A DNA stretch of 63,871 nt, filler included, from Octopus bimaculoides (Eukaryota): the NCBI RefSeq assembly GCF_001194135.2. It is 4 parts of 4 records of this genome, joined end to end, with 100 filler letters (N's around TTAATTAATTAA, not from the genome) between each part and the next. Parts side by side here need not be neighbours in the genome. Positions count along the whole stretch, not along the records: positions 1 to 28,360 come from NC_068993.1; 3 more parts are not named here. The stretch is one strand, 5' to 3'. Below, piece by piece: positions 1,110 through 25,916 of this stretch (the stretch's first letter is position 1; the number at the start of each line of letters is the position of its first letter). Made by a program: the position numbers and the translations under genes. The notes beneath the pieces were generated by a model. The model ran no database searches, was not told the origin of the DNA, and saw only the letters and a program-made list of their open reading frames with translations.

Positions 1110-1576
1110 ATTATACTAGTACCAAATTTTTGCACAAGGCCAGCAATTTCGGGAACCGGTCTATTACACTGGGGTCTATAACACCGATCCCAGTGTTCAA
1201 CTGGTACTTATTTCACTGACGTCGAAAGAACGAAAGGCTAAGTCGAACTCCGGTGGAATTTGAACTCAGAAAGTAAAGGCGTACGAAATGCCGCTAAGCG
1301 TTTTGCCCGGCGTGCAAACGATTCTGCTAGATTGCCGTCTTCATAACCAACGATGATATTTTTTTCTACTCTACGCACAAAGCCCGAAATTTTTGGGGAG
1401 GGGGCCAGTCGATTAGATCGACTCCAGTATGCAACTGGAACTTAATATACCGACCACGAAAGGATGAAAGGCAAAGTCAACCTCGGTGGAATTTGATCTA
1501 AGAACGTAAAGACAGACGAAATACCAGTCAGCAGCATTTCACCCAGCGTGCTAACGTTTCTGTCAGCTCGCCACCC
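1110..1576 (-). mobile_element. Two tandem tRNA-derived SINE copies (family A, head GGCGGCGAGCTGGCAGAA)
   Basis: Shared core ATCGACCCCGAAAGGATGAAAGGCAAAGTCGACCTCGGCGGAATTTGAACTC seen many times in the window. A/B-box-like motifs on the minus strand. Confidence 0.85.
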
Positions 1577-3800: not shown

Positions 3801-4232
3801 AAATTTGGTGGAAGTGTATAAGTATAGTCCTATAATACATGAAGTGTTGAAACAGCTGTATTCTTAGAACGTCGAACAAAATGCTTTGTCTTTATTGAGT
3901 AACAGCATTTTCAAATCCTATCGAAGCCCTTTTTATCGTCCATATTATTGGAATCAATAAATAAAGTTTCCTGCCAAGTACTGGAGTCAATTTAAATATA
4001 AAGCTTCCCAGAATCGAACAGAATTATATTAGAAAAATAAGAAACCAATCATTTACTGGTGCTTTATTTTATCGATCCATAAACGATGAAAGGCCAATAA
4101 ACTTCGGCAGAATCTGAACGCAGAGTGCAAAAGGACACATCACGACTCAACATTTTACTACTTTAAGCCAGACTCCCGTTCCAATGCCAAACTTCAGTCA
4201 TGACGAAGTAATCATTAATTTACATTAAATAA

Positions 4233-4452
4233 GGCGGCGAACTGGCAGATTCGTTAGGACGCCGGGCGAAATGCTTAGCGATATTTCGTCTACCACTACG
4301 TTCTGAGTTTAATTTCCGCCGAGGTCGATTTTACCTTTCATCCTTTCAAGGTCGATTAAATAACTATCAGTTACGCACTAGGGTCGGTGTAATCGACTTA
4401 ATCCTTTTCCCCCACAAAATATGAAGCCTTGTGCTTCCAGTAGAAAGAATTA
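4233..4452 (+). mobile_element. Family-A SINE, near full length
   Basis: Head GGCGGCGAACTGGCAGATTCG through tail GTAGAAAGAATT, with CpGs intact. Confidence 0.88.
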
Positions 4453-4774
4453 CTTTAACTATTATTATTTTTAGATTCATATTCTGAAGACCATGCATCT
4501 TTTAATTTTTATTTGTTTCAGTCATTAGGCTGCCACCTCTGCGTTTGAATGGCATTCATTTTATCGGGACCCTAAATGAGTGAAAGCTGAGGTTGACTTG
4601 GACATGATTTGAACTCCGAACGTAAAAATCCGGAAGAAATACTGCGATGCATTTTTTTCTTTTTTCTTTTGCTCGACGTGATAATGATTCTGCTAGATCA
4701 CCACCTTCATTTCTTCGGCAAAAATAACAGTAATAATAATAACAACAATAACAGTAATTTTCAAATAAATAGGT

Positions 4775-4906: not shown

Positions 4907-5569
4907 TCAGTTGTCACTGAAGTCTATAGGCATAGTCTTTTGTGTTTCTGATTTTTCACTACTTCTCGTTATTTTCAGAACCATTTCATTGATTTGTTTT
5001 GTAACTGCATTCCTAATATCACGATCGATAAACCAAAATGTTGGAATTATTCCGGCGCTGCATAAAGACAAATAGGAAAATATTTCTATAATCGCCCATA
5101 GTATATTACTCTTGTTTTCAACTGAAGTCCTCATCAGATGCAAATGAAAGCATTTGAGAATAAATACAGTTGATGCAAATATGCAGTTTGCAATTATACC
5201 TGCAATTAATGAGCTACGAATCAGCTGACGGTCGGCGTTCGTAAGCAGACGATACGACATTAAACCGCGGGATTGGAGTAAGCAGACGATCACAATCGTC
5301 GTACTGGTGGTTGTCATTAAGCTCAACACAAAAGTAAGCCACTGGAAACCTAAGTTGGTCTCTTGATTAAGAGTGAAGTCACATTCGTAATATATTTGAT
5401 TGGAGTTATTGTAAAAACCAAGGAAATATATCGGCATCACGGTAATAACTGTTCCTAACCATGGTATGTATAGCAGAAGACTAGAACCAAAGTTATTCAC
5501 TCTTTGTAAGTAACGGTATGGATTGGTCGCCTGAAGAACTCGGTCGATGCTGATCGCAAACATATGTAA
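4907..5569 (-). CDS. Class A orphan GPCR, coding exon 2 (end of TM3 through TM7, helix 8, C-tail; 220 codons + TGA)
   Basis: Acceptor TTTTCATTCTATTTTCAG (AG 5571-5570), phase 0. Encodes LHMFAISIDRVLQATNPYRY (DRY-like DRV), W4.50 (IPW), ECL2 Cys (YECDF), four further hydrophobic segments and helix-8-like DRDIRNAV. Joining to exon 1 places R3.50 exactly 25 residues after C3.25. Confidence 0.88.
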   Translation of the reverse strand, partial: LHMFAISIDRVLQATNPYRYLQRVNNFGSSLLLYIPWLGTVITVMPIYFLGFYNNSNQIYYECDFTLNQETNLGFQWLTFVLSLMTTTSTTIVIVCLLQSRGLMSYRLLTNADRQLIRSSLIAGIIANCIFASTVFILKCFHLHLMRTSVENKSNILWAIIEIFSYLSLCSAGIIPTFWFIDRDIRNAVTKQINEMVLKITRSSEKSETQKTMPIDFSDN

Positions 5570-5927
5570 CTGAAAATAGAATGAAAACAAGAATACGTCG
5601 TAAAGATCAAAGAATTAAATTAAATGCTTTCTTCCGATTTAAATTTATTTCAACAGAAAGTACAAGACTATCGATATGATAAATTATACATTAGTGCAAT
5701 ATTCAATACGAAATAAGTATTATGTATTCATATATGCATATTTCTTTCGCCATTCTTTCCAAATTCCTCAACAAAGAAATACAGTCGGACTATGACTAAA
5801 GACAAAAGCCACTTTCGAGGCAATTTTGACATCGGTGAACTAACAGACTTTATATGCTAAACTCTTTGCATATATTCCTTTTTCCATATTTGGAGTGAAT
5901 CTGCCGTTCCAGCCGCTATTCCTTTTC

Positions 5928-5958
<31 letters not shown>

Positions 5959-7204
5959 GCATGCACAATCGCGCGGACACACATATATATGCGCACTCGC
6001 ACGTACACACACATGCAATTGCGCTCATTTACATACGGATTGATATATCAAAATGCTTATGACTTATCGTGGGATATATTGTCATGGATATAAATCTGAA
6101 TATAACTGATCTTTATTCATTCGGCCTACTTTGTGAGATATCAGTTCAACCACCGTCTATCTGTTTTTTTTTTATTAATCCACCTTTCCAGCTATTCATG
6201 TATCTTTCCTTCCATCAGCTAATATAATATCTACAGAAAAAAAAAAGATATATCCAAATATATATAACAAATTATCTACATATGAAGAGTATACGCCGAC
6301 ATTTAGAAGCAAAATAGTCGTGGGCTTTATCTGTTGTACATCCGTCTGTGCTTCATTACTCAAATTTGATCTCCGATCCTTTGCTCATGCTGAATGGCTA
6401 TCTTCTGCTAGTGACTTTCTAATTAACGACACAAAATAAACTACATCTCCAACATTCTTACGTAAAATGTTACTGTAATTTGGATTATTTAATTTTCATA
6501 CAAACTTATGTGAGAATTGTAAAGAGACATATATATGAAATGCAATGTAGCTTGCATTAAATATATACGTAGCCACTTGTAAAATTGCCTGAAGTATGAA
6601 GGTCAAAGAGAAAATAGAATAAAATGTAGGAGATAAACAACAATAGACACAGAAAAAGGAGAATTCTGTACGAGATTGAAACAGGTTATTTAGAAAGGAA
6701 TTCCTTGGAAATTCATGTCTGAAGATGGCCATGGTTGCATGCTGAGAACAATGAAGGTGTTTATCAGTTTCCACGATATGTCTATCCTCTGTTAAATATA
6801 TCTGGAAATTCTGAATTCCGAATTCATTGGTAAATTTGACCCACGGCAGTACTTTCGGTACCTTGGCACAAAAAGCCAGTGGAAGGGTTTTAATGTTATT
6901 TTAACATTTAAATATTCTATATTGTTGAAGGCACAGGTCTAGTGGTTAGGGTGTTGTGGTACATTGTGTTTTTGAACAAAACACTTCATTTCTCGTTCCT
7001 CTGCGCGGGGTACACCGGGGCACGTACATTTGTGCAGGTCTTTCGGCAGGTCTTCTTTTGTGCAGGTCTTTCTTTTTGTCATTGAGGTGGTTCTCAGGTG
7101 TGTTAAAAATAATAGGTAAAGACGTTTTTGGATAAATCTCATAAGTTCGTGCTATCGCAATGCTTAAAACTACAAAAAACAAGTTGCTTACTCTTTCTTG
7201 ACAA

Positions 7205-7440
7205 ACGTGCTATTTTCAGGATATTGACGACAAAATGTGCGATCACGCACAAAATGACAGCTTCCTAATCTTGTTTTCTGACCGTGTGAAAATGATCAAA
7301 CTTTAAACCGCTATAACTTTTTAAACACATTTTTCTGGAAAAAGTGAAATAACTGCAGCAATTCAGCTTGGAAAAGTATATCAATGTTCCAAATTTAAAA
7401 ATTTTCGAAATGCTGGCAACCAACCCCAAAGGATCCACAA
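7205..7440 (+). repeat. Unclassified interspersed repeat (probable non-autonomous DNA transposon)
   Basis: Homologous to about 11240-11335 and 13430-13670 (ACAGCTTCCxAATCxTGxTTTCTGAC...AAAAxGATCAAACTTT). Confidence 0.6.
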
Positions 7441-7451
7441 TATTTTATGAG

Positions 7452-7745
7452 GATGCATGGCCTAGTGGTTAGGATGTTGCACTCACAATTGCGAGATCGT
7501 GGTTTCAATTCCTAGACGAGGCAGTGCATTGTTTTCTTGAGCAAAACACCTCATCTCATGTTGTTCTGCCGTCACTTCGACACCTGATGTGTGGTACACT
7601 GTGCACCTGTCTAGGCAACGTCGATTTGATGGAGGGAGTGAAGTAATGGATAGCACATACCTTTGATCACTATAAGCAAATCATTTGTGTAGGTCGTTCG
7701 GAAAAAGTTGAACGCTCATACATTCTCTTCGAAGGGAGAGTCCGC
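7452..7745 (+). mobile_element. tRNA-derived SINE (TGGCCTAGTGGTTAGG head; related partial copy at about 6935-7090)
   Basis: A-box-like TGGCCTAGTGG and B-box-like GGTTTCAATTCC, followed by a CTTGAGCAAAACAC body. Confidence 0.7.
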
Positions 7746-8938
7746 TATAAAAATAGCAATTTATCTTGGTCACTCATCGTCCATCTCCCCAAACTCATAA
7801 TCATACCTGAAAGTTACGTCTTAAAATGTAAAACATATAACACAGGTCATTTACATAATAGTATATAGCTGAAGGCCATTCCATCAATAATTAATGGACT
7901 ATCGAGTATATAGGAGTTGATATACGAATATATTGATGGCTTTCGTTATTTGAAATGAATTAATCGACAGAAATGACCCTTGCCGTATTAAATGTTGTTA
8001 AGTGTTAGCTGAACATTATTTTATTGCACAAGCAAAGGAGACTACTTCGAATGTTTAAAGCCAATAATCACTGTTTGTAATATAAACGGTTAATGTGATT
8101 GGCCAGGTCTTTGCAGCATGAGTTCAAATCTTGCCGAAGTCAACTTTGCTTTTTTTTTATTTCTGATGTCGATAAACTAAAAGACTAGTGTGATTTAATC
8201 GACTACATTTTCCCCTCAAATTTCTGCTCGTGACTATACAAGAAATTATTGTTAGCAAACACAACAGAAAGCGTCCTCCTGTTTATATTGAAATGTTTGA
8301 TGTATTTCTATTGGGAAGTGGTTATTTATAAAATTACAAGAAAGATTATACTGTATAATAATTCATTTTCTAAGCTTGTGGGGTTTTTTTGCATTAATAG
8401 CAGCATTAGTAGTAGTAGTAGTAATAGTAGTAGTTGCTGTTATTGTTGTTTAGTTGCTGGCTGAACCGTAAGCAGTAGGAGTAACACGATGTATGTACAC
8501 ATGTCTGAGTCGAAGATAACATTCAGATAAGTTTTTGACACCAGGTCAAAGAGTACAAATTTATCAAACTACACCGCGCAGCGTTCTGTTATGAGATGTT
8601 TGGCCTCCTCAAGCTTTGACTGAGTGAGAGTGGTGGTGGTGGTGGTGGGGGGGGTGATGAGGTTGTAGAGTGAAAAAGAGAAAAGGAGAGTGGGGGTAGA
8701 AAGAACTGATCGTTCACGCGTGAAGTTAACATTCAAGAAATTTATGATTCCTTTTTCTGATGAAGGCCGGTAGAAGAAGAGAACTGGCGAAGAGTATAAA
8801 GAGAATAAAGAAGACGTTATTAGAAGAGAGGCGGTAGAGACAGAAGGGGAATGTGTGTTAGAGAGACTGAAGAAAAAGTTGAAGATGTAACCTTGGTTTC
8901 TAATAGTCACACACACACGCAAACACATTCCACGCTCA

Positions 8939-8979
8939 CTTATATATGCTGTGGAAGAATTTCTATAGCACACGTCATC
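8939..8979 (-). promoter_or_regulatory. TATA box plus CRE/ATF-like element inside the GPCR intron
   Basis: Minus strand reads GATGACGTG, then about 25 nt later TATATAAG, followed by a CT-rich tract. Motif match only. Confidence 0.25.
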
Positions 8980-9054
8980 ACTGTCGTATGTGTGCCGTTA
9001 ATTGCGACAAGGTGAATTTGAATATCATGTTATAAACAAGTAATGTATTAATTA

Positions 9055-9255
9055 TTTCTCTTACTTGTGTCAGTCACTGGACTGTAGTCATCCTCGAGCA
9101 CCACTTTGAAAGGTTTAGTCGAATAAATCGACTCCGGTAAGTTTCTTTTTTTTTTTAAAGTCTGGTACCTATTCTATTAATCCTTCTTTACCGAACCACT
9201 CAGTTACGGGGATGTAAACAAACCAACACCAGTTGTCAAGCAGTCGTTGGGGACA
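9055..9255 (-). mobile_element. Family-B SINE 3' half
   Basis: Reverse complement of the GGTGCTCCAGCATGGCC...GACTGAAACAAGTAA tail. Confidence 0.8.
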
Positions 9256-9911
9256 AACACGTACACAAACACACAAATACACACGCACACAGCCACATAA
9301 CGACACACATGCTTTGCTTGAACTGTTCTTTTCTTTCTCTTTCGACTTTGTCCTTTTTCCTTTCTCTCATGAAAGGTCATGCTCGAAATGTCACACCTTT
9401 TTTTCCATCATAAACTTTATCTGAGCGTCAATCTAATACATTCATTGTGTATGCCCCTTTCACATTTGTTCTTTTCCTGTTTTCGTTTTCTATTTGCCTA
9501 TATATATNNNNNNNNNNNNNNNNNNNNNNNNNNNNNNNNNNNNNNNNNNNNNNNNNNNNNNNNNNNNNNNNNNNNNNNNNNNNNNNNNNNNNNNNNNNNN
9601 NNNNNNNNNNNNNNNNNNNNNNNNNNNNNNNNNNNNNNNNNNNNNNNNNNNNNNNNNNNNNNNNNNNNNNNNNNNNNNNNNNNNNNNNNNNNNNNNNNNN
9701 NNNNNNNNNNNNNNNNNNNNNNNNNNNNNNNNNNNNNNNNNNNNNNNNNNNNNNNNNNNNNNNNNNNNNNNNNNNNNNNNNNNNNNNNNNNNNNNNNNNN
9801 NNNNNNNNNNNNNNNNNNNNNNNNNNNNNNNNNNNNNNNNNNNNNNNNNNNGTTTTGGAAAAAGCAGTATTTTAAAAATGAAATAAAATTAAATTAATTA
9901 AAAAAAAAATA

Positions 9912-10468
9912 CAGTAGAATTCGCCTAATTAGTCATCCCGAGGAAAAAATTGAAAGTGACGAATTAGGTGAAGTAACAAATTAACCAAAGACGAATTTAA
10001 CTTACGATTTATTTGTCAGATAATTTTTTTTTTATGTGGAAGAATTGACTGAGTATATGGTTGATTTGAAACCATTTAATGACCATTCTACTGCATTTAT
10101 TATTAAATTTGTTTTTGTAATGGGATTTCAATTCAAGTGAAAAAAGCATCTTGTGCAATATTATTTACAGTTTCATATTTTATTGTTTGTACTTGATACA
10201 ACTAAATAAAATGACTATTTTAATTGTATATTTCAGAAGACATGATTAAAATTGTTTTTTGGTTTAAACTTATTTTTGATTATTTTTGTACCATGTTTTA
10301 AATAATTTACTTGTATTTAGATTCTCATAATAAGTAAAATAAATTATCTCAAATTTACCGAATGTATTTCAATTTTTAAAATGTTATTCTCGGTTGCAAT
10401 ATTTTAAGTACAGCAGAATTTTAATTTTAAGTACTTTTTAGAGGTGACGAATTAGGCAAATTCAACTG
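9912..10468. mobile_element. 557-bp MITE, Tc1/mariner superfamily (pogo/Tigger-like)
   Basis: About 26-bp terminal inverted repeats (CAGTAGAATTCGCCTAATTAGTCATC and GGTGACGAATTAGGCAAATTCAACTG, few mismatches). TA dinucleotide on both flanks, AT-rich non-coding interior. Confidence 0.8.
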
Positions 10469-11429
10469 TAGAAATCTTGTTCTGTACTTTTCCAGGTGTA
10501 ATAACTTAAGAATATTATCATGCATGCGTCTGCATTTTTCATTGTAATCCACTATTTTTTTTTCCTGACAATGCAATAAAATTAATAAATATTTGAATTA
10601 AATGAAACCTGCTTGTATATTTATATTCTTTAGAATTAAAAATTTTTAGAATAATGAGAAATGTAATTATGACATTTTTATATTGAAACAAAGTGCATAA
10701 TACGAACGCGCCATAAAAGAAAGAGCAAACATTCATTATGAAAAAAAAAATTTATGAATATTAATGCAATGCTAATTTTATGATAAAATCAAGAAATAGA
10801 TTAGCTATATCTATATATAGTTAGAAGAGCTAGCTATAAGAGGCATGAGCATATATAAAAATTCAAAAATAGCCAATGCAGCCACCGTAAGGCAAGAGGG
10901 GCCACCTGCCCTTGTTAGGGCAAAGTTAGTCGAAATTCATGCAAAAGGAAAATAATGCCTGCAATTCAGCTATTGCTTTTGTCAACTTGCCTGAAAACAA
11001 AAGATCCGAATCCTGCTACTCTGAAAATCCAATCATGCTATCTGAAAGCAAAAACCTTGTCACTTTACCCTAAGAAATAATAATCTAAATTCTGCTCCTC
11101 TTAATATTTAAAAGCAAATAAAAAACTTACTAAAACTTCAGAAGTTCTTACAACTTTGGTCGTCGTAATGCTTTGCTTTCGATTGTTTAATAAAAATTCC
11201 TCCTCGTATAATGATTTTGCTTTCATTTTGTGATAGACAACTATCGTGAAGAAGATGCCAGCTTCTAAATCTTGTTATCTGATTTGATAAAAATGATTAA
11301 ACTTTAAACCTCAGTAACATTTTTCTGCAATAAGTATGTATCTGTGTGTGACCGTTTATTTACGATGGTCAACAAAAAAGAGTCCACTTGTCATCAATTG
11401 TTGTCAACGTACCCCGCTCTCTCCTTAAA

Positions 11430-12800
11430 GCTACGTATTCGTCACGCTCACCTTTGTTGCTCTTCATGGGCGTTTTAAAAGTTACTTATGTGTATGTATT
11501 TGCGTGTATTTACGAAAGTATGTATGCAGCGTCGCGTGTATATCCCTGAATTCAATTTCAGGCGTTATTCTCTTTTTGACCTTACATATTTGAAATCTCA
11601 ACTTTTTCTCTACTGAACTAATTTTCAAATTTTTTGGCTCAAAATGTAGCTTAGGAGGTGACCAATCTAAAAATGTATAAACATCGTCAAATTTGATAAA
11701 GAACTTAATTAGGGACAAAGTCTAGAAGTGGTCACGAGTGAGTGACTTTAAAAATATTATTCACACACGGCAGTGTGTGAATGATTTTTATTACAATACA
11801 GTGTATTCTATAAATACGAGGTATGTCTTTACAAGATACCTAAATACTGAATTGAATCAAACATTTTGCAATGTTGGTTTCCAATTCTGGCAGGAGGCCA
11901 TCAGATCGGGAGAAGAGGGAAGTTGATTACATCGATCTCAGTGCTCAGCTGATACTCATTTTATCGAGTACCGAAAAGATAAAAGCAAAGACGACCTTGG
12001 CGGAATTTGAACTCAGAATGTAGAGACAGACAAAATGCCGCGAAGCTTTCACACTGCGTGTTAACGACTCTACTAGCTCGTCGTCTTGGTACCGTAATAA
12101 GTAATAATATTTCTTGAAAATTATTTTCACGTACTTTTGGCACATTTAGCTTATATAATAACTTATTTCATTTCGAATATTTTTTGAAAAGATTAGTACC
12201 ACGACACTCATTTTGATGAGTTCTATCATATGAGGTAAAAAAAAATTTTTTAAGTTCTGAATTTGATTTTAGGCGTTACCACTTTTTTCGGCACAGTTGG
12301 CCCCAGTAGTTTTTTTTTTCTTTTAATTTTAAAATTTGTTTTGATATAATTGGCATCATCAGATTCCTCTAGTGGAGATCTATCAGAATATTGAATTTAA
12401 ATATAGTTTTCTTTTGAAATAAGAATAATATTTAGAGAAAAAGTCGATTTCAAGCGTTACGCTTCTTTTTTTTTTTTTTGTCGCCGGTTTTTACCTTAGT
12501 ACTTTTTCTCTACTGCATATTTTTGCATATAAGTAACATGGATAGATTCCTCTCACCGAGATCTATCATATAAGCTAAAATAAAATATAGATTTCTTTAA
12601 AAAGAAATGTTTGGACTCAAAATCGATTTCAGGCGTTGCTCTCCTAGCTGAAAATGTAGCTTAGGATGTGACCTATCTAAAAATGCAAACACCATCAAAT
12701 TCGGTTAAAAACTTAGTTATTGACAAAGCATAGAAGTGGTCGCGAGTGACTAGATTTTGACATGAAGAATATTACTCACGCACTACCGTGTTTGAAATGA
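11430..12800 (+). mobile_element. Two related non-autonomous rolling-circle-like (Helentron/HINE-like) remnants interrupted by a SINE
   Basis: Shared 3' block (AAAATGTAGCTTAGGA...AGAAGTGGTC[A/G]CGAGTGA) at about 11640-11785 and 12650-12800. Perfect hairpin ATTCACACAC-GGCA-GTGTGTGAAT at 11759-11782. About three degenerate internal units at 12200-12640. Superfamily assignment is inferred. Confidence 0.45.
11870..12090 (-). mobile_element. Family-A SINE
   Basis: Same core as the other family-A copies. Confidence 0.8.
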
Positions 12801-12809
12801 TATATTCTT

Positions 12810-12965
12810 TTATTCTTTTACTTGTTTCAGTCAGGGTTTTAGTCAACAGAGTCGACCCCAGAACTTATTCTTTGTAAGCCTAGTACTTATTCTATCGGTG
12901 TCTTTGGCCGAACCGGTCAGTTACGGGGGTCATAAATACACCAGCATCGGTTGTCAAGCGTTTGG
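12810..12965 (-). mobile_element. Family-B SINE 3' fragment
   Basis: CTTATTCTTTGTAAGCCTAGTACTTATTCTATCGGT...GGTTGTCAAGCG. Confidence 0.8.
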
Positions 12966-13289
12966 CTGCCACCTATCAGTTTCTTCAATTTCTGTTCCAG
13001 TTGATTTCATATTAGGTGTAATGATGTAGTTTAGTATGCTAAATAAAGTTCATTTTAGTCAGAAATCAATAAATAGAGAGTTAATGCCTTTTAGAGTTTA
13101 CAAATTTTAGGTGATTTTAGCCAATCGTATGCTACAAAAACATTCATGCCCGTTTCTATAGTAACAAAGCAAGCTGTTACTAAGCTATTTACTCACGCGG
13201 TCATTTTTCGCTTATTAAATGGCTGTTGTGAGATGTGCTAAAACTAATATCTAAATACTCCTTAAATGACNNNNNNNNNNCTTGGTTTT

Positions 13290-13680
13290 TGCATAATCGT
13301 ATGAATTCGCGTGTGTAGAATACAAATTAGCAAAAAAAATTCTGAAAATTCCATAAAATAAAATGTTATGAGGGGTTACATGGCGTGCGTAAAGCAGAAT
13401 TCCGCCAATATTTTATTTGTTTACAGTTGAAAACGTGCTGTCACGTGCAAAACGACAGCTTCCAAATCCTGCTTTCTGACTGGGTAAAAACGATCAAACT
13501 TTTAACTGTAACTTTTTTTTTTTTAATTCTGTGAAAAGCTAAACATCCTCCGAGATTGAGCGTGGAAAATTACACCAATACGCCGAATTTTAAAATTTTC
13601 CCTAAACTTTAAAATTTCCACTGGTGCAGCCAAACAGAAAAGATCCGTGCAACACTTTCTGGGTACCCAGATATTAGAAT
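13290..13680 (+). repeat. Unclassified interspersed repeat, same family as 7205-7440
   Basis: Visible homology to 7205-7440. Confidence 0.55.
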
Positions 13681-14308
13681 ATGTCATAGTAGTAGTAGTA
13701 GCAGCACTGAATAAAAATACAACTCGTGTTTTTGTTGTAAACATTAAATATTCTTCCCTGATGTAAGACTAATTCCCATGGGTTTATTTTTGTTCTTCAT
13801 TTAATCAGATGATAGCATTTATTTGTAAATTATTGTATTCTTTCTTATGGTTATAGAGCTCAATCTTACATCACTTGTTTTATTCTTGTTGCGACAAGCA
13901 TATAAATATTGTTTCAGCTGAAAATAACACTCATCATTGTAAGTTTTCCGTTATGCAGACAGGGATTAGACAGAGCTTATTTTGCCATAAGACTGTCGAA
14001 TTACTTGATCAATTACTCATTCTAACTTTCCTGCATGACAAAAAGAATTGCTCTTTATCGACCATAGTGAAAAGAATGGTAAATTTGTACTATATTAGTA
14101 AATTGTATATATTAAGTGAAAAATTTTGTTGTTGTTAACTCTGCCTGCTACTCTACTTGAATTTTAGTCTACTCCAGCCAATTGGTGGTCATTTGACTCT
14201 AGAATTTCTATTGTCGAATATAGTTTGTACCCACATCTATAGGTATATATACATGTATGTGTAGATGACTCAGTTGTGGTGTTTAAATATAAAACTAAAT
14301 AACCATGC

Positions 14309-14690
14309 AGGCGCAGGCGTGGTAAGAAGGTTGCTTCCCAATTACATGATTCTGGGTTCAGTCCTACTACGTGGCACCTTCTACTATAGCTTCGGGCTGG
14401 CCAAAGTTTTACGAGCGGATCTGATAGACGGAAACTGAACGAAGTTCGTTGTATATCGATGTGTGTGTGTCTTAGAGTCTGTGTTTGTCCCCCACCACCG
14501 CTTAACAACCGCTATAGGTGTGTTTACGTCCCCGTAACCTAGCGGTCCGGCAAAGAGAACGATAGAATAAGCACCAGGTTGCAGAAAGAAAGAAAAAACA
14601 AAGAGCACTGGAGCCGATTCATTCGGCTAAAAATTCTTCAAGGCGGTGCCCCTGCATAGCCGTAGTCTAATGACTTAAAGAAGTGAAATA
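14309..14690 (+). mobile_element. Family-B SINE, near full length
   Basis: Head GGCGCAGGCGTGGTAAGAAG, central (TG)n, tail AAGGCGGTGCC...ATGACT. Confidence 0.88.
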
Positions 14691-17600
14691 CTAGTTTAGA
14701 TCTACTCATCTTTGGGCTCAGCATGCTTCCACTGTACCACTCTACTCAGCGAGTTTTTAAGTAAATGTATAATGGAGGTAAGACTATTGAAAAGGTTGCA
14801 AGACTCAACGAAAATTTTTGGGAAATAAAAATAAGGAATAAGTGGAAATTTTACCGGTGAGTGTGTTAAATTATAAAGCACAAAAAGAAAATGACTCTCC
14901 CCAGACACAACAGAATATGCTTCAACACACGAACTCACATAAAGAATCTTGCAAACCAAATCCAAAAACGAAATATAATGGATTATTTCTCTATTGTCTG
15001 TTTTCGGTCTCATTACTTCTATTACATCATCAATCTTATGTTATTTATTTATTTCTATGCTTTGGACTCTTTCAAATGAACGAAGCATAGCAACAACACA
15101 ATGCATGCAACATTGCTATGTTAATTTACTTGCTGAAAGGCGACATTTCACTCTGCCAATACTCCGAGAGTCATTTGACAAAATCACATACCTAGATCTA
15201 TGCGTTGTAAAAGTCTTTTGGGCGTCTACTCATTTGTCATTTTCAGATCAACCAGGAGCCAATCAATTGTATAAATGTCTCCCCAGTGCAGCACAGCAAA
15301 CAAGCTTGCTAGTCTTGTTACAATATGGCCTGTCACATGTCACTTTCTTGACTGTAGATGTGTTCAAAATAATTTACATTGACTAATCATTTCAAATTTT
15401 GAAAATAGTAAGGTTTAGCAGTCTTAAAACATATCACATTACGAAATATATTTCACAGAAGTTCCCCAAACTAGAAACTTTTAATTAGCTATTATCCTGG
15501 ACTAAAAAAAAATTATCCATGGAGTATCAATCTAGCAATATCAATATATGTAATTACCATAAACGTCTACACATGAACCTCAAAATGTGTTTATCCTTAC
15601 GAGATAGAAAAGCAACTCAACATAATGAAACCCTAAGATATAAAAGATTCATAAACAAGCATATCGGACATACATTTCCATCTTCAGCTGCCTAATGGGT
15701 ATCATTTGTATTAGGTCAGGAAGAGAAAGCAATTCTCATGATCCTTCATAGTTTTTAGCGCGTCCTATATTGATGGGAAGAAGTGCGGAAAGTTATTCTA
15801 AATCCGGTGATCGGTCCAGATGCTAACAATAAAATGAACTCCGCTAAAAGTACAAGCGGACCAGCCGGTGATTGAGTAAGTCTACTCTCCAAGTTTACCA
15901 CCGACATGGACTGGTATTTTGTTTATCAACACCGTGAATCTGAAAGGTGACTTCGACCTCAGTGAGATTTGAGTTTATAGAGCAGACAATAGGAACAAAT
16001 AATACTAGGTGTTTTGCCCTACGCTTTTCGTTTCACAACTACATGGTTCAAGTTTCGTTCCCACTGCTCAGCACTTCAGGCAAGTATCCCATACATTGAA
16101 AACCTCAATATATCAGATCGGCTGATCAACTATAAAACAGTCAACAGGTGGGCCATGTTCCTATTACAACCGACTCCATTCTAAACGACAGTTAATTGGC
16201 AAAATGCTGTTATTACTGTTCATGTGCTATTGTTGTTTTGTAACATATGAGTAAAATTATAATTAAAAACGTTCCAACCGTGGACATTCCATATTTTACT
16301 CAAACTGGGCATCAGAGAGTACATTATACAATGTATTATTTTTCCATTCTTTAAGGCGTTGATATTATTTGAAGGACATTTGGATACCTCAGCTTCTTGT
16401 AGCAAGTCGATAGACCATCTAAAACCTCCTTCATTGGTTTAAAACGTTAACATTTGGATTTGAGAGAAATTTCGCAGCTATTTTTAGTAGGCCGAGCTAT
16501 TACACAAGGTATTCCACGTGGTCTCAGATTCCAAAAGACTGGACGCAATTCCGTGGTAACACCAAGGCGTTTTAATTCAGTGTATAAGTTTGGGTTCCGT
16601 AAAAGCTATTAAATACTTTATCAAGAATCGTATTAAGGACACTGACACAGAATATTTGAAGACGATGGATGAAAACGATGGATTCGCAGAATCGTTAAAA
16701 TATCCAATAAATATCTAACGATAGCTATTCCGACCCTTTGTGTCCTGTGCTCAGGTACTGTCGAAACCAAGTTTACCTAGGGGGTCCATAAATACAGTAC
16801 TAGTCAAATATTGTTGTGGGGTGGGGCGGTAGATATTTTATCTCTTTCTCAGGGAGTTGCGGAGCGTCATTCACGATGCCCACTTTCTCCAAGAAATCGA
16901 GAAGATTTAACTGATAATAATTAGGTCTTAAGTATTTAGTATTGTGTCAAATAGATTAATGTTTAGTAAGAATGGGGAGGGAGAGGAAGACATTCATTAA
17001 GTTGATTTTAATACTGGTGGGTGGTATGCAAATTATTAATTTAGTTGAGTAGGAATCATATTTGTTGTTGTGGAGGACCAGGTCAACTCTAGTGAAATTG
17101 ATCTATAAAATGCAGGTAGTCGACCGAAAACTAAATTCTATACAAAGATAGAGTTTAGATACACGGAAGCAAAGTCTAAGGACCACACATGTAATATATC
17201 GGAAGGGATGCAGTGACAGTCTGTACATGCTGTTCTCTCCTCACAGTCATCCGCAGATTCTATCAGAAAGCAATGCGAAGCTGGATAAAATAGACTCAAA
17301 TAGAACGCCGTAGGTGACGTTCCACTACATTTCTCATTGGTGGTGTGCATATCAGCATAATATTTTGCGCTAATGTATCTACAGATGCATTTATTTTATT
17401 TTACTTTATTTTATTCTTGCTTGCTCGGATTAAGAGGGACAAACAGAATGGTGTGATTACAGTGAACGCACATGTAGCGACAGGGAGTCAGAGCATCCTT
17501 CCTCAGCAGTGGTAATGAAAAGAAAGGAAGAAATTAGTGTTTTTAACTATTTAGTGAGTGAGATGACTTTACAGCGGCAATCCGAACAAATTCACAAATT

Positions 17601-18394
17601 TTATTGGTTAAACACTAATATTGTAGTACCGCCAGAATAAATTGGAACTTGGTACTATCATTTGAAATTACTCGAGGTGATGCCAATGCAATTTGCTCAA
17701 TAGCATTTTCGTATGGAATGAAGCTAGATCATGCACTTTCTTCAATGAAAGCTCATCGTTAATGGTATAAAGATCTCACAAACTGTTCACATTTATATCA
17801 CAAATAACAAATCGGGATTCTCAAACAACTCCTAAATCAAATAATGTCAAGAAGTATTCTATCACACAATAATTCACAACTTCAAAAACATACTAGCAAT
17901 TCTAACGATCCCAATAAGACCGATAATAGAGATAACAAGCAGACTGTAGATTCTGTCATATCACATGTTTAACTTAAGGTTGGCTATATGTTTAACTATG
18001 TATGTTGCTGTATGTTGCGTTAGTTCGCCTAGCCACTATGTATTTTCTGGTTGAACTTCTCCTTTGCAATGACTTGGGCAGGTGACTTCCATCAGAGTCT
18101 CGAAGCAATGTGAGTGAAAGTTGGTGGGTAGTAATGCTGCTTCGATTTAGGTGCACAATTTCTGTTCTTGGATGATAGACATAATCTGTCGTGGTGTTTA
18201 ATCCTTTACCATGGTTCCTTGGAGACCTTTAACAGAGTTCACTCTGTTGCAAGAATTCATCCCATTCTTCTACCAGCATCAGAAATCACGAAAATTATCA
18301 CGAGCGCAGCCATTAAAATGAATAAGCCATTAAAAATGAGCAAGCCATTAAAAATGAAACAAGAAAAGGTTGACTTGTTCACACGGCAATAGAT

Positions 18395-18650
18395 ATGTGT
18401 ATGGTTAAGAAGCTCGCTTTGCAACGGCATGGTTTCAGGTTCAGTCCTTCTGCGTAGCACCTTGGACAATGTCTCCTACTATTGCTCTTGGCCTTCATTT
18501 GACGACAAGTGTTGGTTTCTTTACTTAACAGTTCGGCAAGAGATACCATAGAATAAGTATCAAGCTAAAAATAAGCACTAGGGTTCGATTTGTTCGACTA
18601 AACCCTTTAAGCGGTGCACCAGCATGGCCACAGTCCAGTGACTGAAACAA
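18395..18650 (+). mobile_element. Family-B SINE (internally deleted), about 80 bp from the GPCR exon-1 donor
   Basis: Head and tail motifs of family B. Confidence 0.8.
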
Positions 18651-18731
18651 AAAAATATACACACATGCATACATGTGTGTGAGTGTGCGTGTGTATGTGT
18701 GTGTGTAAAATCATATAAAACAGTTACTTAC

Positions 18732-19076
18732 CTGAAATGCAATATCAAACCCAACCAGTACAGTGTAATAAACTTTACAGAAAGCAACTCCAATATTCCA
18801 TTGGAAATAATAGAGATGAGCAAACACCAAATGTCCGAATATACCCCAGAGAGAACTACTGATGCAGATGTTTAATAACAGTTTATCTAAAGGTCTAGTG
18901 TCTCCCTTTTTTATCTTTCGAAGAAGTACAACGACGAGGAGTAGGTTGGGCAACAGCACTGTAAGGCTAATAGTAATATATAATAAATAATAGTAGAGTT
19001 CTTGCTGGTATTTCGATGATTTGTAGGTTCGGTAGTAATTACGTAGTCCGTAGATGGTGTAGTCGTACAATTCCAT
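18732..19076 (-). CDS. Class A (rhodopsin-like) orphan GPCR, coding exon 1 (N-terminus, TM1, TM2, first half of TM3; 115 codons)
   Basis: ORF MELYDY...GFDIAFQ with hydrophobic TM1 (LYITISLTVLLPNLLLVVVLL, N1.50), TM2 and the ECL1 motif WNIGVAFC (C3.25). Ends at a consensus donor CAG|GTAAGT (GT at 18731-18730), phase 0. Confidence 0.88.
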
Positions 19077-19174
19077 GATTTAGTACTTTGGAAAGAGAAA
19101 TAAATAAAATATAGTTAAGACAATAATACACAGGAGTAAAAAAACAACAACAAAGAAACGAACAGAAATAATAG

Positions 19175-19388
19175 TGATTTCAAATTTTGGCACAAAGAAA
19201 CCAGTTTCAAGGAGAATGTAAGTCGATTTCATCGACCCCAGCACTCAACTGGCACTTATTTTATCGACCCCGAAAGGATGAAAGGCAAAGTCCACCTCGA
19301 CGAAATCTGAACTCAGAACGTAAAGACAGACGAAATACAACGGAGCATTTTGCCCGGCGCGGTAACGATTCTGCCAGCTCGCCGCCTT
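19175..19388 (-). mobile_element. Family-A SINE just upstream of the GPCR start
   Basis: CpG-intact copy of the family-A core. Confidence 0.88.
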
Positions 19389-19997
19389 AGAACACAAGTA
19401 ATAATGGGTAACATATACATACAGGCATAACGTGCTGCAAGCTGTTGTCGTTTGGTTACTACAACCGCTATTACAGATTGTTGTGCTTTGATTTGATTAG
19501 ATATTTCAAACCAACCAACTCAGCACCAGCAAATTGCGGAAAGCTATCACTTCTTACAAAATTGAGTGACATCTCTCGTAGGTTATGTATAAACCAGCGT
19601 TCAGTGTACAAACCATTATAGAGAATTCAGTCCCTAGGCCTTTATTCTAATTATTCAAACCCTTAGTGTTACCCTCCTCCTGGATTATTTCTCTTAGCTT
19701 TCTTTTATTATGAATCATTCAAATGAATATTGGCCAAATATATTTCTATTATTCCTTATACATTTCTGATTGCTAAGTTGACGAGGTCTTACAGACCGAA
19801 ACTTGTGTACATAGTTATCTCCCGCTTATAACGAAGATCAAAGTGTCTTTTCCTGATAACTTACTTAAGAATTTATTAAAATTATCTCCCCTTCTCTTTG
19901 GAATTGCTAACACGAGTTCTCTATTTTCCGACTCGCCCAAGAAAGAAAAGTTTAAGAACTTCAGAATTTATTATGTAAAGTCATACCACACCTTTTC

Positions 19998-20148
19998 TAT
20001 CCATCCATCCATCCATCCCATCCCATCCCATCCCATCCCATCCCATCCCATCCCATCCCATTCCATCCATCCATCCATCCATCCATCCATCCATCCATCC
20101 ATCCATCCATCCATCTACCTACCTACCTACCTACCTACCTACCTACCT
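19998..20148. repeat. Compound microsatellite (CCAT)n/(CCCAT)n/(CCAT)n/(CTAC)n
   Basis: Directly visible. Confidence 0.95.
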
Positions 20149-22249: not shown

Positions 22250-22492
22250 TTTTACTTCCTATTTCTTTATTGCCCACATGGGTCTAAACATAGAGGGGAC
22301 AAGCAAGGACAGACAAATGGATTAAGTCGTTTACATCGACCCCAGTGCGTAAATGGTACTTAATTTATCGACCCCGAAAGGATGAAAGGCAAAGTCGACC
22401 TCGGCGGAATTTGAACTCAGAACGTAGTGGCAGACGAAATACCGCTAAGCATTTCGCCCGGCGTGCTAACGTTTCTGCCAGCTCGCCACCTT
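22250..22492 (-). mobile_element. Family-A SINE, near-consensus, CpG-intact
   Basis: Full head-to-tail match to the other copies. Confidence 0.9.
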
Positions 22493-23621: not shown

Positions 23622-23965
<344 letters not shown>

Positions 23966-25769: not shown

Positions 25770-25833
<64 letters not shown>

Positions 25834-25851
25834 CGTAGTAGTAGTAGCAGC

Positions 25852-25916
<65 letters not shown>

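What the first reader, a model, noticed from the sequence alone, without database searches (positions are those of the whole stretch)
4907..19076. Intact orphan class A GPCR that has lost nearly all canonical activation microswitches
Seen in sequence: the spliced 335-aa ORF is uninterrupted. By manual alignment it keeps N1.50, the ECL1 WxxG..C3.25, D3.49-R3.50, an ICL2 ATNPYRY, W4.50, an ECL2 Cys, P7.50 and helix 8. By the same alignment D2.50 is S (NICISS), P5.50 is S, Y5.58 is absent, TM6 CWxP is CIFA, NPxxY is IPTFW and DRY is DRV. There is no Asp at the aminergic 3.32 position (Leu), but an Asp sits at 3.36. Established knowledge: these positions form the Na+ pocket, transmission switch and tyrosine toggle of rhodopsin-family receptors. 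Inference: a lineage-specific receptor with non-canonical function (fast-evolving chemosensory receptor, decoy/scavenger or allosteric dimer partner) rather than a decaying pseudogene, since both exons remain open with intact splice sites.
Basis: partly seen in the sequence, partly recalled or inferred. Interest (0 to 1): 0.72.

Follow-up and report, generated by a model that had tools for sequence, protein, structure and literature searches.

The report
Conserved octopus orphan receptor, switches missing
This is an intact, strongly conserved two-exon gene of Octopus bimaculoides for a cephalopod-only orphan rhodopsin-family receptor that really lacks most of the residues such receptors normally use to switch on; databases auto-name it a dopamine or melatonin receptor, and it fails the tests for both.

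Summary
Exon 1 (19076-18732, minus strand) and exon 2 (5569-4907) join in phase 0 through consensus splice sites. They give a 335-aa protein identical to RefSeq XP_014785749.1 of Octopus bimaculoides. Both assembly gaps lie in the 13-kb intron and hide no coding exon.

The protein is a class A 7TM receptor (Pfam 7tm_1 48.8 bits; AlphaFold pLDDT 86.8). It keeps N1.50, the C3.25/ECL2 cysteines, D3.49-R3.50, W4.50 and P7.50. It lacks D2.50, P5.50, Y5.58, W6.48, P6.50, N7.49 and Y7.53. TM5 and TM6 contain no proline at all.

It is not decaying or fast-evolving. One-to-one orthologues are intact in O. sinensis, O. vulgaris, another octopod, Argonauta and two decapodiform lineages, with dN/dS of 0.08-0.17. 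ICL2 and ICL3 are about 90% identical between octopus and cuttlefish, against 45% overall.

DRV and W7.53 are traits of a wider lophotrochozoan cluster. The other losses are specific to this coleoid orthogroup.

Most likely it is a working orphan receptor with a rewired polar core (D3.36, K6.52, H6.55). Ligand, tissue and coupling are unknown. Interest is moderate.

The parts
18732..19076 (-). Coding exon 1 (residues 1-115: N-terminus, TM1, TM2, ECL1 and TM3 up to position 3.40). The ATG is at 19076-19074, with an in-frame TAA at 19082-19080.
   Evidence: The same exon is found in O. sinensis, O. vulgaris and Argonauta.
18726..18731 (-). Splice donor GTAAGT, directly after codon Q115 (phase 0).
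   Evidence: The donor is identical in O. sinensis and O. vulgaris and is GTGAGT in Argonauta.
5570..18731 (-). Intron of 13,162 bases as assembled. It contains both assembly gaps (9508-9851 and 13271-13280).
   Evidence: It is collinear with the gap-free O. sinensis intron of 18,192 nt. The orthologous intron is 21,106 nt in O. vulgaris and 1,502 nt in Argonauta. There is no GPCR-like coding sequence inside it.
5570..5590 (-). Polypyrimidine tract and AG acceptor (TTGTTTTCATTCTATTTTCAG|).
   Evidence: The acceptor sits at the same codon in three octopods, Argonauta and a decapodiform genome.
4907..5569 (-). Coding exon 2 (residues 116-335: rest of TM3, DRV, ICL2, TM4-TM7, helix 8 and the tail). 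The TGA stop is at 4909-4907.
18855..18872 (-). NICISS, TM2 positions 2.45-2.50. S74 replaces D2.50 (G in decapodiforms).
18744..18746 (-). D111 = 3.36, a buried acidic residue that is invariant in the orthogroup. Position 3.32 is L107 (18756-18758).
5510..5545 (-). D124-R125-V126 (3.49-3.51) through ATNPYRY (ICL2, P132 = 34.50). ICL2 is one of the two most conserved parts of the protein.
5321..5323 (-). S198 = 5.50. It replaces the TM5 proline (C in Argonauta and decapodiforms).
5240..5272 (-). ICL3, SRGLMSYRLLT (residues 215-225). It is 91% identical between octopus and cuttlefish.
5144..5170 (-). TM6 core T249-V250-F251-I252 (6.47-6.50, replacing CWxP), followed by L-K254(6.52)-C-F-H257(6.55). 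LKCFH is invariant in all orthologues.
5006..5047 (-). I290-P291-T-F-W294 (replacing NPxxY) and the start of helix 8, FIDRDIRNA.
11131..11226 (-). Alternative first exon inside the intron (MKAKSLYEEEFLLNNRKQSITTTKVVRTSEVL, GTAAGT donor). An older gene model (UniRef A0A0L8IA32, 252 aa, lacking TM1-TM3) uses it. It is probably not a constrained coding exon.

Best explanation
Shown. The locus is the Octopus bimaculoides gene for a single-copy orphan rhodopsin-family (class A) 7TM receptor, found here only in coleoid cephalopods. It has two coding exons split by a phase-0 intron inside TM3. It is expressed as a spliced mRNA at least in decapodiforms and is kept under strong purifying selection.

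The receptor retains the structural scaffold of class A: N1.50, the C3.25 and ECL2 cysteines of the conserved disulfide, W4.50, P7.50 and helix 8. It also retains the transducer-facing elements D3.49-R3.50 and P34.50 of ICL2. On the stem of its orthogroup it lost the Na+-pocket Asp (2.50), both TM5/TM6 prolines, W6.48, N7.49 and both activation tyrosines (5.58, 7.53).

Inferred. It is still a working signalling receptor, not a relic or a silent decoy, because the cytoplasmic loops that contact G proteins, GRKs or arrestins are the most conserved parts. Its on/off equilibrium is probably governed by a replacement polar core of orthogroup-invariant residues: D111 (3.36), Q115 (3.40), H117 (3.42), K254 (6.52), H257 (6.55) and S286 (7.45). 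D3.36 and K6.52 are a plausible buried ion pair between TM3 and TM6. Proline-less, straighter TM5 and TM6 may give altered or high basal activity.

The ligand is unknown. It is not a classical biogenic amine (no D3.32), and neither automatic name (dopamine receptor 3, melatonin receptor 1B-like) is supported.
For: - Gene model and identity to RefSeq XP_014785749.1/XP_014785758.1.
- Class A membership: Pfam 7tm_1 E=8.6e-13, 48.8 bits against a cut-off of 30.5. AlphaFold2 with a 71-sequence alignment gives pLDDT 86.8 and pTM 0.85, with seven TM helices plus helix 8. Foldseek matches only class A structures; the best target-normalised TM-scores are 0.83 (alpha1A-AR), 0.80 (H2R) and 0.78 (SSTR2), the last two titled inactive.
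- Orthologues are intact with the same junction in O. sinensis, O. vulgaris and Argonauta hians. Exon 2 is intact in a further octopod. Orthologues also exist in Acanthosepion pharaonis and a second decapodiform.
- Splicing: ~2.4-kb assembled contigs (Logan, three sequencing runs) carry AFQ|FHMF uninterrupted. A decapodiform genome has an intron with an AG acceptor at exactly that codon, and its exon-1 ORF reads through into GT.
- Selection: dN/dS is 0.09-0.17 against O. sinensis and 0.08 against Argonauta. Fisher tests on NG86 counts give p=6.5e-11 and 8e-55. Synonymous divergence (0.115) is close to intron divergence (14%).
- Regional identity, octopus versus cuttlefish: ICL2 90%, ICL3 91%, TM helices 40-59%, tail 7%.
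- Isolation: among 1.84 billion representative proteins only the orthologues score below 1e-30. The next hit is a coleoid paralogue at 4e-16.
- Motif states and their specificity to the orthogroup.
- Precedent that class A receptors without W6.48 and a Na+ site still signal: MrgD has high basal activity that depends on a 3.36/6.48/7.45 hydrogen-bond network (PMC9287403).
Against: - No functional or tissue-expression data were available for the octopus gene. No octopus spliced read was inspected. The evidence is an identical RefSeq model plus contigs that look like decapodiform transcripts.
- In canonical class A receptors the missing residues (D2.50, Y5.58, W6.48, N7.49, Y7.53) sit on the common activation pathway (PMC6954041 was returned by the literature search but not read). 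Normal G-protein activation may therefore be impaired.
- The 7TM protein DARC, which also lacks most of these motifs, is described as functionally divergent from classical chemokine receptors (PMC11349380).
- The D3.36-K6.52 pairing rests on alignment positions and general knowledge of class A geometry. Model coordinates could not be inspected here.
- The pairwise dS to Argonauta (about 1.4) is approaching saturation.
Confidence: 0.6

Rival explanations
1. It is a non-signalling 7TM: a ligand scavenger or decoy, a chaperone, or an obligatory dimer partner. In this reading the conserved cytoplasmic loops serve trafficking or partner binding, not G-protein activation.
For: Six of eight canonical microswitch residues are missing, the lowest count among full-length relatives. 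DARC, which 'lacks most of these motifs', is an atypical chemokine-binding 7TM protein (PMC11349380). The C-terminal tail is rich in Ser/Thr and acidic residues in both octopods and decapodiforms, which is compatible with arrestin-type trafficking.
Against: D3.49-R3.50 and P34.50-Y34.51 are invariant. ICL2 and ICL3 are about 90% conserved where the rest of the protein is about 45%. From general knowledge, not tested here, atypical chemokine receptors typically have a degraded DRY/ICL2 region. MRGPR-type receptors signal without W6.48 and the Na+ site.
Confidence: 0.25
2. It is a chemosensory receptor of the lineage-specific, rapidly diversifying class A type described in lophotrochozoans.
For: The nearest relatives are unnamed lophotrochozoan class A proteins with partly eroded motifs. 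Such receptors often lack canonical motifs. ECL2 and the N-terminus are the most variable extracellular parts, and decapodiforms carry a 27-aa ECL2 insertion.
Against: The gene is single-copy, with no other GPCR exon in the 28-kb window. It has one-to-one orthologues across Octopoda and Decapodiformes and dN/dS of about 0.1. [quoted passage not shown] A conserved single-copy chemoreceptor for a conserved cue is not excluded.
Confidence: 0.1
3. It is a true dopamine D3-like or melatonin receptor, as the database names say.
For: Automatic names in RefSeq and GenBank. The best sequence matches among solved structures are aminergic or melatonin receptors: TAAR1, 5-HT2A/B, H2R and MT2.
Against: Those matches are weak (E 1e-7 to 1e-9, 16-19% identity) and generic. 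Position 3.32 is Leu or Met, not Asp, in every orthologue, while 39 of 65 relatives have D3.32. The aromatic 6.48/6.51/6.52 cluster is absent. The three species carry three different names for the same orthologue.
Confidence: 0.03
4. It is a decaying pseudogene, or an annotation artefact joining two unrelated ORFs.
For: The intron is long and contains gaps. Many functional motifs are lost.
Against: The ORF is intact in at least six species with the identical phase-0 junction. Contigs that look like spliced transcripts exist in decapodiforms. dN/dS is far below 1. Homologue alignments are continuous across the junction.
Confidence: 0.01

Closest known systems
Rhodopsin-family (class A) GPCRs, Pfam PF00001 7tm_1; by sequence nearest to the aminergic-like branch (TAAR1, 5-HT2A/2B, histamine H2)
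   Same: It has the seven-helix fold plus helix 8, N1.50, the C3.25 and ECL2 cysteines, the ECL1 WxxG motif, D3.49-R3.50, P34.50 in ICL2, W4.50 and P7.50.
   Different: It has no D2.50, P5.50, Y5.58, CWxP, N7.49 or Y7.53. It has no D3.32 amine anchor. Identity to any solved receptor is only 16-19%.
Coleoid paralogue group B (O. bimaculoides 'histamine H2 receptor-like' P0160; Argonauta P0006; Acanthosepion P0162)
   Same: It is the best non-orthologous hit (75 bits) and the nearest neighbour in 61 of 100 NJ bootstraps. It shares the ICL3 motif (S-x-G-[IL]-x-SY-x-L) and the helix-8 DRDIRNA motif. It has W7.53, lacks W6.48, and is likewise found only in coleoids in these searches.
   Different: Group B keeps D2.50, P6.50 (RFPW) and N7.49. 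It lacks D3.36 and K6.52. Its O. bimaculoides gene is intronless and lies on another chromosome.
Unnamed lophotrochozoan class A cluster (e.g. P0010 of the bivalve Mactra, the P0027 cluster of the chiton Liolophura, P0061 of the annelid Owenia, and P0026/P0040/P0043/P0086)
   Same: Members have DR + hydrophobic instead of DRY, W at 7.53, a one-residue-shorter TM7-helix 8 turn (..WFID..), frequent N/S/G at 2.50 and I/V at 7.49. P0086 reads GVVPTFWFID against GIIPTFWFID here.
   Different: These relatives keep P5.50 and W6.48-x-P6.50 and retain 4-5 of 8 canonical residues, against 2 of 8 here. Identity is only 17-23%.
Mas-related GPCRs (MrgD, MRGPRX2)
   Same: These are class A receptors that signal without W6.48 and without the Na+ site. 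In MrgD a polar 3.36/6.48/7.45 network sets high basal activity (PMC9287403). Here D3.36 and S7.45 are invariant.
   Different: There is no sequence relationship beyond class A. MrgD keeps P5.50, NPxxY and Y7.53, which are missing here.
Duffy antigen receptor / atypical chemokine receptors
   Same: [quoted passage not shown] It is the model for the decoy rival.
   Different: Here D3.49-R3.50 and a highly conserved ICL2 and ICL3 are retained. There is no sequence similarity to chemokine receptors beyond the fold.

Membership tests
Class A (rhodopsin-family) GPCR, PF00001 | Profile score above the Pfam gathering threshold | tested here: met
   48.8 bits against a cut-off of 30.5, E=8.6e-13, residues 44-285.
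Class A (rhodopsin-family) GPCR, PF00001 | Seven-TM fold with helix 8 | tested here: met
   AlphaFold2 gives pLDDT 86.8 and pTM 0.85. The helices are 22-56, 62-90, 97-130, 141-165, 184-214, 226-267 and 270-296, with helix 8 at 298-321. There are 908 Foldseek PDB matches at E<=0.001, and all 50 listed are class A receptors.
Class A (rhodopsin-family) GPCR, PF00001 | Structural anchors N1.50, the C3.25 and ECL2 cysteines, W4.50 and P7.50 | tested here: met
   N44, C100, C178, W152 and P291 fall in columns that are invariant or nearly invariant across 71 sequences.
Class A (rhodopsin-family) GPCR, PF00001 | E/DRY with R3.50 | tested here: met
   D124-R125 are present and invariant. Position 3.51 is V, not Y, which is common among the nearest relatives.
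Class A (rhodopsin-family) GPCR, PF00001 | Canonical activation microswitches D2.50, P5.50, Y5.58, CWxP and NPxxY | tested here: not met
   The residues are S74, S198, T206, T249-V-F-I252 and I290-P-T-F-W294. Only P7.50 survives. Three alignment methods agree. These define the canonical mechanism, not family membership.
Biogenic-amine receptor (the RefSeq name 'dopamine receptor 3') | Asp at 3.32 as the counter-ion for the amine | tested here: not met
   Position 3.32 is L107 in octopods and M in decapodiforms.
Biogenic-amine receptor (the RefSeq name 'dopamine receptor 3') | Aromatic cluster W6.48/F6.51/F6.52 | tested here: not met
   The residues are V250, L253 and K254.
Melatonin receptor (the name given to the O. 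sinensis and Argonauta orthologues) | Specific sequence relationship to MT1/MT2, with NRY and NAxxY motifs (from general knowledge) | tested here: not met
   MT2 is only one of many weak PDB matches (E about 1e-5). The motifs here are DRV and IPTFW.
Lineage-specific expanded (chemosensory-type) class A GPCRs of Lophotrochozoa | Tandem or multi-copy expansion, no one-to-one orthologues between species, relaxed or positive selection (PMC11886862; PMC6408891) | tested here: not met
   The gene is the only GPCR sequence in the window. It has one-to-one orthologues in at least six species. dN/dS is 0.08-0.17.
Atypical / decoy 7TM receptors | Absence of G-protein coupling | not testable with these tools
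   This needs a heterologous signalling assay. The sequence proxies (R3.50, conservation of ICL2 and ICL3) point the other way.
Processed or unitary pseudogene | Frameshifts, stops, lost splice sites, or dN/dS near 1 | tested here: not met

The most novel reading that the evidence does not exclude
A class A receptor lineage has replaced the whole canonical activation relay (Na+ pocket, CWxP toggle, PIF proline, NPxxY and Y5.58 tyrosines) with a different intramembrane switch. This would be a buried D3.36-K6.52 (with H6.55) ion pair between TM3 and a proline-less TM6. It would have been kept unchanged since before the octopod-decapodiform split, while the receptor still couples through a conserved DR(V)/ICL2/ICL3 surface. 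If so, it is a natural example of an alternative class A activation architecture.
Probability: 0.15. Interest if true: 0.65.

Novelty: new variant of a known kind. Interest (0 to 1): 0.4.

Why it matters
First, it corrects three misleading automatic names for one conserved cephalopod gene (dopamine receptor 3, dopamine receptor 3-like, melatonin receptor 1B-like).

Second, it defines a small orthogroup, found here only in coleoids, that has been under strong constraint since before octopods and decapodiforms diverged. From general knowledge that is roughly 250-300 million years; it was not tested here. The orthogroup lacks six of the eight residues usually treated as the common class A activation pathway.

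If the receptor signals, it is a natural test of how dispensable that pathway is and what can replace it. If it does not signal, it is a conserved invertebrate atypical receptor.

In either case it is a defined, clonable target for deorphanisation in a group where few GPCRs have been characterised. It is not a new kind of molecule. Orphan invertebrate GPCRs with eroded motifs are common, so the surprise for a specialist is moderate.

Tried and rejected
- AlphaFold2 with only the five orthologues gave an unusable model (pLDDT 45). It was repeated with a 71-sequence alignment.
Octopus transcript evidence therefore could not be fetched.
- The two assembled contigs that carry the exon-2 ORF turned out to be genomic DNA of another octopod, not transcripts.
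- Word-indexed homologue searches with alignments A2 and A5 scored only 8000 candidates and returned few, mostly generic, hits.
- One search was a wasted two-sequence alignment.
- The HMMER alignment to 5-HT2B puts W6.48/P6.50 on L253/C255. MAFFT and hhalign against closer relatives put them on V250/I252. The latter was adopted.
- The first NJ bootstrap was invalid because saturated Kimura distances produced NaN values. It was redone with Poisson distances.
- Scans for tRNA genes and Rfam families found nothing in the window.
- Literature searches for the accession numbers, the sequencing run numbers and 'NPxxW' found no paper.
- An opsin-like reading was considered and dropped. Position 7.43 is Leu or Val, not Lys.

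Full report
**1. What is in the sequence**

On the minus strand an ORF starts at 19076. Its ATG has A at -3 and G at +4, with an in-frame TAA two codons upstream. The ORF runs 345 nt to CAG|GTAAGT at 18732/18731. A second ORF is entered at 5569, directly after the acceptor TTCTATTTTCAG, and runs 663 nt to TGA at 4909-4907. The junction is phase 0 and the spliced product is 335 aa.

No other ORF of 95 aa or more in the 28.4-kb piece looks like a gene. The others are low-complexity sequence or ORFs running across Ns. tblastn of the protein against the window finds only these two exons.

**2. The assembly gaps**

The scan's program asked for this to be tested first. Both gaps (9508-9851 and 13271-13280) lie inside the 13,162-nt intron, at least 3.9 kb from either exon.

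- The window is collinear with the gap-free orthologous locus of O. sinensis across both gaps. The first gap corresponds to about 1.2 kb there.
- That locus, the O. vulgaris locus and the Argonauta locus (intron only 1,502 nt) contain no further GPCR-like coding segment.
- Alignments of the protein to TAAR1, 5-HT2B and H2R cross residues 115/116 without an indel.

The gaps therefore do not affect the reading frame or hide a coding exon. They only make the intron length uncertain.

**3. Identity**

The 335-aa protein is residue-for-residue identical to RefSeq XP_014785749.1/XP_014785758.1, 'dopamine receptor 3 [Octopus bimaculoides]', UniRef A0A0L8I8Z0.

The orthologues carry other automatic names:
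- 'melatonin receptor type 1B-like' in O. sinensis (97% identical) and Argonauta hians (80%);
- 'dopamine receptor 3-like' in O. vulgaris, a 201-aa mis-spliced model.

The O. vulgaris genome in fact holds an intact 335-aa CDS with the same junction.

**4. Is it a class A GPCR, and are the motifs really gone?**

Class A membership is clear:
- Pfam 7tm_1 scores 48.8 bits against a cut-off of 30.5.
- With a 71-sequence alignment, AlphaFold2 gives pLDDT 86.8 and pTM 0.85. It predicts seven TM helices, a short ICL2 helix and helix 8.
- Foldseek returns only class A receptors. The best target-normalised TM-scores are 0.83 (alpha1A-AR), 0.80 (H2R) and 0.78 (SSTR2).

Residue numbering was derived three ways: HMMER profile alignments to PDB chains, a 71-sequence MAFFT alignment and hhalign of the orthologue profile against a relatives' profile.

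| Position | Residue here |
|---|---|
| 1.50 | N44 |
| 2.50 | S74 (G in decapodiforms) |
| 3.25 | C100 |
| 3.32 | L107 |
| 3.36 | D111 |
| 3.49-3.51 | D124-R125-V126 |
| 34.50 | P132 |
| 4.50 | W152 |
| ECL2 Cys | C178 |
| 5.50 | S198 (C in Argonauta and decapodiforms) |
| about 5.58 | T206 |
| 6.44 | F246 |
| 6.47-6.50 | T249-V250-F251-I252 |
| 6.52 | K254 |
| 6.55 | H257 |
| 7.45 | S286 |
| 7.49-7.53 | I290-P291-T-F-W294 |

It placed CWxP on C244-I-F-A247, about five residues too early.

The losses do not depend on register. The predicted TM5 (184-214) has no Pro or Tyr. TM6 (226-267) has no Trp or Pro. TM2 has only D64, at its cytoplasmic end.

Of eight canonical residues (D2.50, R3.50, P5.50, W6.48, P6.50, N7.49, P7.50, Y7.53) the orthogroup keeps two. 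Among the 65 nearest relatives, 19 keep eight and 11 keep seven. Only one, a short 296-aa sequence, keeps fewer than two.

**5. Not a pseudogene and not fast-evolving**

Intact orthologues with the identical phase-0 junction exist in O. sinensis, O. vulgaris and Argonauta hians. Exon 2 is intact in genomic contigs of another octopod. Decapodiform orthologues at about 45% identity exist in Acanthosepion pharaonis and in a second genome.

Selection measures:
- Pairwise dN/dS is 0.09-0.17 against O. sinensis (dS about 0.08-0.12) and 0.08 against Argonauta (dS about 1.4).
- NG86 counts give 9 nonsynonymous differences on 787 sites against 25 synonymous on 218 (Fisher p=6.5e-11). For Argonauta p=8e-55.
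- Synonymous divergence is close to intron divergence (86% identity).

Splicing evidence comes from decapodiforms. In a decapodiform genome the exon-1 ORF reads AFQ|VST... into a GT intron, and exon 2 follows ...TTTTCAG| at the same codon. Contigs of about 2.4 kb, assembled from three sequencing runs, carry AFQFHMF uninterrupted. I read these as spliced transcripts; their run type could not be checked. Other members of that protein cluster were seen on tens of further contigs.

Octopus junction reads could not be fetched, so the octopus evidence is the RefSeq model only.

**6. Where the constraint sits**

Octopus and cuttlefish proteins are 45% identical overall. By region:
- ICL2: 90%
- ICL3 (SRGLxSYRLLT): 91%
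- TM2, TM3 and TM6: 52-59%
- other TM helices: 40-44%
- helix 8: 24%
- tail: 7%

Decapodiforms carry a 27-aa insertion in ECL2.

Invariant polar residues inside the bundle are D111 (3.36), Q115 (3.40), H117 (3.42), N243, K254 (6.52), H257 (6.55) and S286 (7.45). The block LKCFH is invariant.

**7. Relatives and the order of events**

A profile search of 1.84 billion representative proteins found only the orthologues below 1e-30. The next hit, at 4e-16, is a second coleoid orthogroup, called B here. It comprises Argonauta P0006, O. bimaculoides P0160 'histamine H2 receptor-like', Acanthosepion P0162 and P0161. Everything else scores 1e-9 or worse.

Group B is the nearest neighbour in 61 of 100 NJ bootstraps.
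- It shares the ICL3 and helix-8 motifs and W7.53.
- It keeps D2.50, P6.50 and N7.49, and lacks D3.36 and K6.52.
- Its O. bimaculoides gene is intronless and on another chromosome.

More distant relatives are unnamed or auto-named proteins of bivalves, chitons, annelids and unidentified samples. Many of them have DR + L/F/V, W7.53, a shortened TM7-helix 8 turn (..WFID..), N/S/G at 2.50 or I/V at 7.49. They keep P5.50 and WxP.

So DRV and W7.53 are older family traits. The combined loss of D2.50, P5.50, W6.48, P6.50 and N7.49, together with the gain of D3.36 and K6.52, occurred on the stem of this orthogroup before octopods and decapodiforms split. These states have been kept since then.

**8. 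How it most likely works (inference)**

Strong purifying selection is concentrated on D3.49-R3.50, ICL2 (P34.50-Y34.51) and ICL3. That pattern fits a receptor which still engages a conserved cytoplasmic transducer.

Three things are missing: the Na+ pocket, the toggle Trp and both helix-kinking prolines. The on/off equilibrium must therefore be set differently. The obvious candidates are the invariant polar residues at pocket-facing positions.

In known class A structures 3.36 packs against 6.48 and 6.52 (general knowledge). An Asp at 3.36 and a Lys at 6.52 could therefore form a buried TM3-TM6 ion pair, with H6.55 and S7.45 nearby.

MrgD offers a precedent. It has S6.48 and no Na+ site. It has high basal activity that depends on hydrogen bonds among 3.36, 6.48 and 7.45 (PMC9287403).

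The opposite precedent is DARC, which 'lacks most of these motifs' and is functionally divergent (PMC11349380). That rival cannot be excluded without an assay. I weight it lower because R3.50, ICL2 and ICL3 are retained here.

The ligand is unknown.
- Absence of D3.32 argues against a classical amine.
- The short Tyr- and acid-rich N-terminus (E/D-Y-x-x-YGLRN-Y, conserved) and a conserved N-x-S/T sequon in ECL2 are noted, but nothing is concluded from them.

**9. Comparison with the literature**

Ritschard et al. (PMC6408891) describe cephalopod-specific class A expansions with tandem clusters and positive selection. Nath et al. (PMC11886862) describe lineage-specific expansions that lack one-to-one orthologues. 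This gene shows the opposite pattern: single copy, one-to-one orthologues and a low omega.

No paper in the library mentions its accession numbers or an NPxxW motif.

**10. Verdict**

The locus is an already-annotated but mis-named and uncharacterised orphan class A GPCR, found here only in coleoids, with an unusually complete and anciently fixed loss of the canonical microswitches.

It is a divergent variant of a known kind. Interest is moderate (0.4). It would rise if the receptor is shown to signal through an alternative core.

Noticed in passing
window 1120-1345, 1345-1580, 4220-4455 (reverse), 11860-12110, 19160-19400, 22250-22500: An interspersed repeat of about 170-240 bp has at least six copies in the window and many more in the O. 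sinensis locus. Read in reverse complement, it has a tRNA-like head with a B-box-like GAGTTCAAATTCCGCC, so it is probably a SINE. One copy ends only about 90-140 bp upstream of the receptor's start codon. No Rfam or tRNA match was found.
   Followed up: partly
window 11131-11226 (minus strand), inside the intron: A 32-codon ORF (MKAKSLYEEEFLLNNRKQSITTTKVVRTSEVL) with a GTAAGT donor is the alternative first exon of an older O. bimaculoides gene model (UniRef A0A0L8IA32, 252 aa, lacking TM1-TM3). The ORF is open in O. sinensis and O. vulgaris, but at 84% and 81% amino-acid identity, which is about neutral. It is absent from Argonauta's short intron. It is probably not a constrained coding exon.
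   Followed up: partly
L006 (O. vulgaris OX597826.1), exon 1 at 10001-10345, exon 2 from 31452: The deposited O. vulgaris protein CAI9731585.1 (201 aa, 'dopamine receptor 3-like') is a mis-spliced model that skips most of exon 2. The genome encodes an intact 335-aa orthologue with the same junction as the window.
   Followed up: yes
window intron 5570-18731, compared with L001, L006 and L002: The length of the orthologous intron varies about 14-fold. It is about 13.2 kb here (with gaps), 18.2 kb in O. sinensis, 21.1 kb in O. vulgaris and 1.5 kb in Argonauta hians. The splice sites and phase are unchanged.
   Followed up: partly
L010 (O. bimaculoides CM046604.1) and proteins P0006/P0160: The nearest paralogue group ('histamine H2 receptor-like') is also found only in coleoids in these searches. 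It has R at 6.48 (LRFPW) and W7.53, and its O. bimaculoides gene is intronless on another chromosome. The Argonauta copy alone has DHL instead of DRL, that is, it has lost R3.50.
   Followed up: partly
window 18660-18725, 19999-20115, 23623-23691, 23850-23952, 25770-25916, 26401-26581, 27169-27218, 27755-27843: The region is dense in microsatellites. An (AC)-rich run begins directly after the splice donor. Others are (ATCC)27, (ACT)23, (TATC)26, (TAG)49 and (TCTA)22. (CA)n/(AT)n and (AG)n runs flank a third assembly gap at 26582-27168, which lies outside the gene.
   Followed up: no
protein residues 1-30 (window 18987-19076) and 168-172 (window 5399-5413): The N-terminus is rich in Tyr and acidic residues, with a motif conserved in all orthologues (E/D-Y-x-x-YGLRN-x-Y). 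ECL2 carries a conserved N-x-S/T sequon. These might be tyrosine-sulfation and glycosylation sites, but this was not tested.
   Followed up: no
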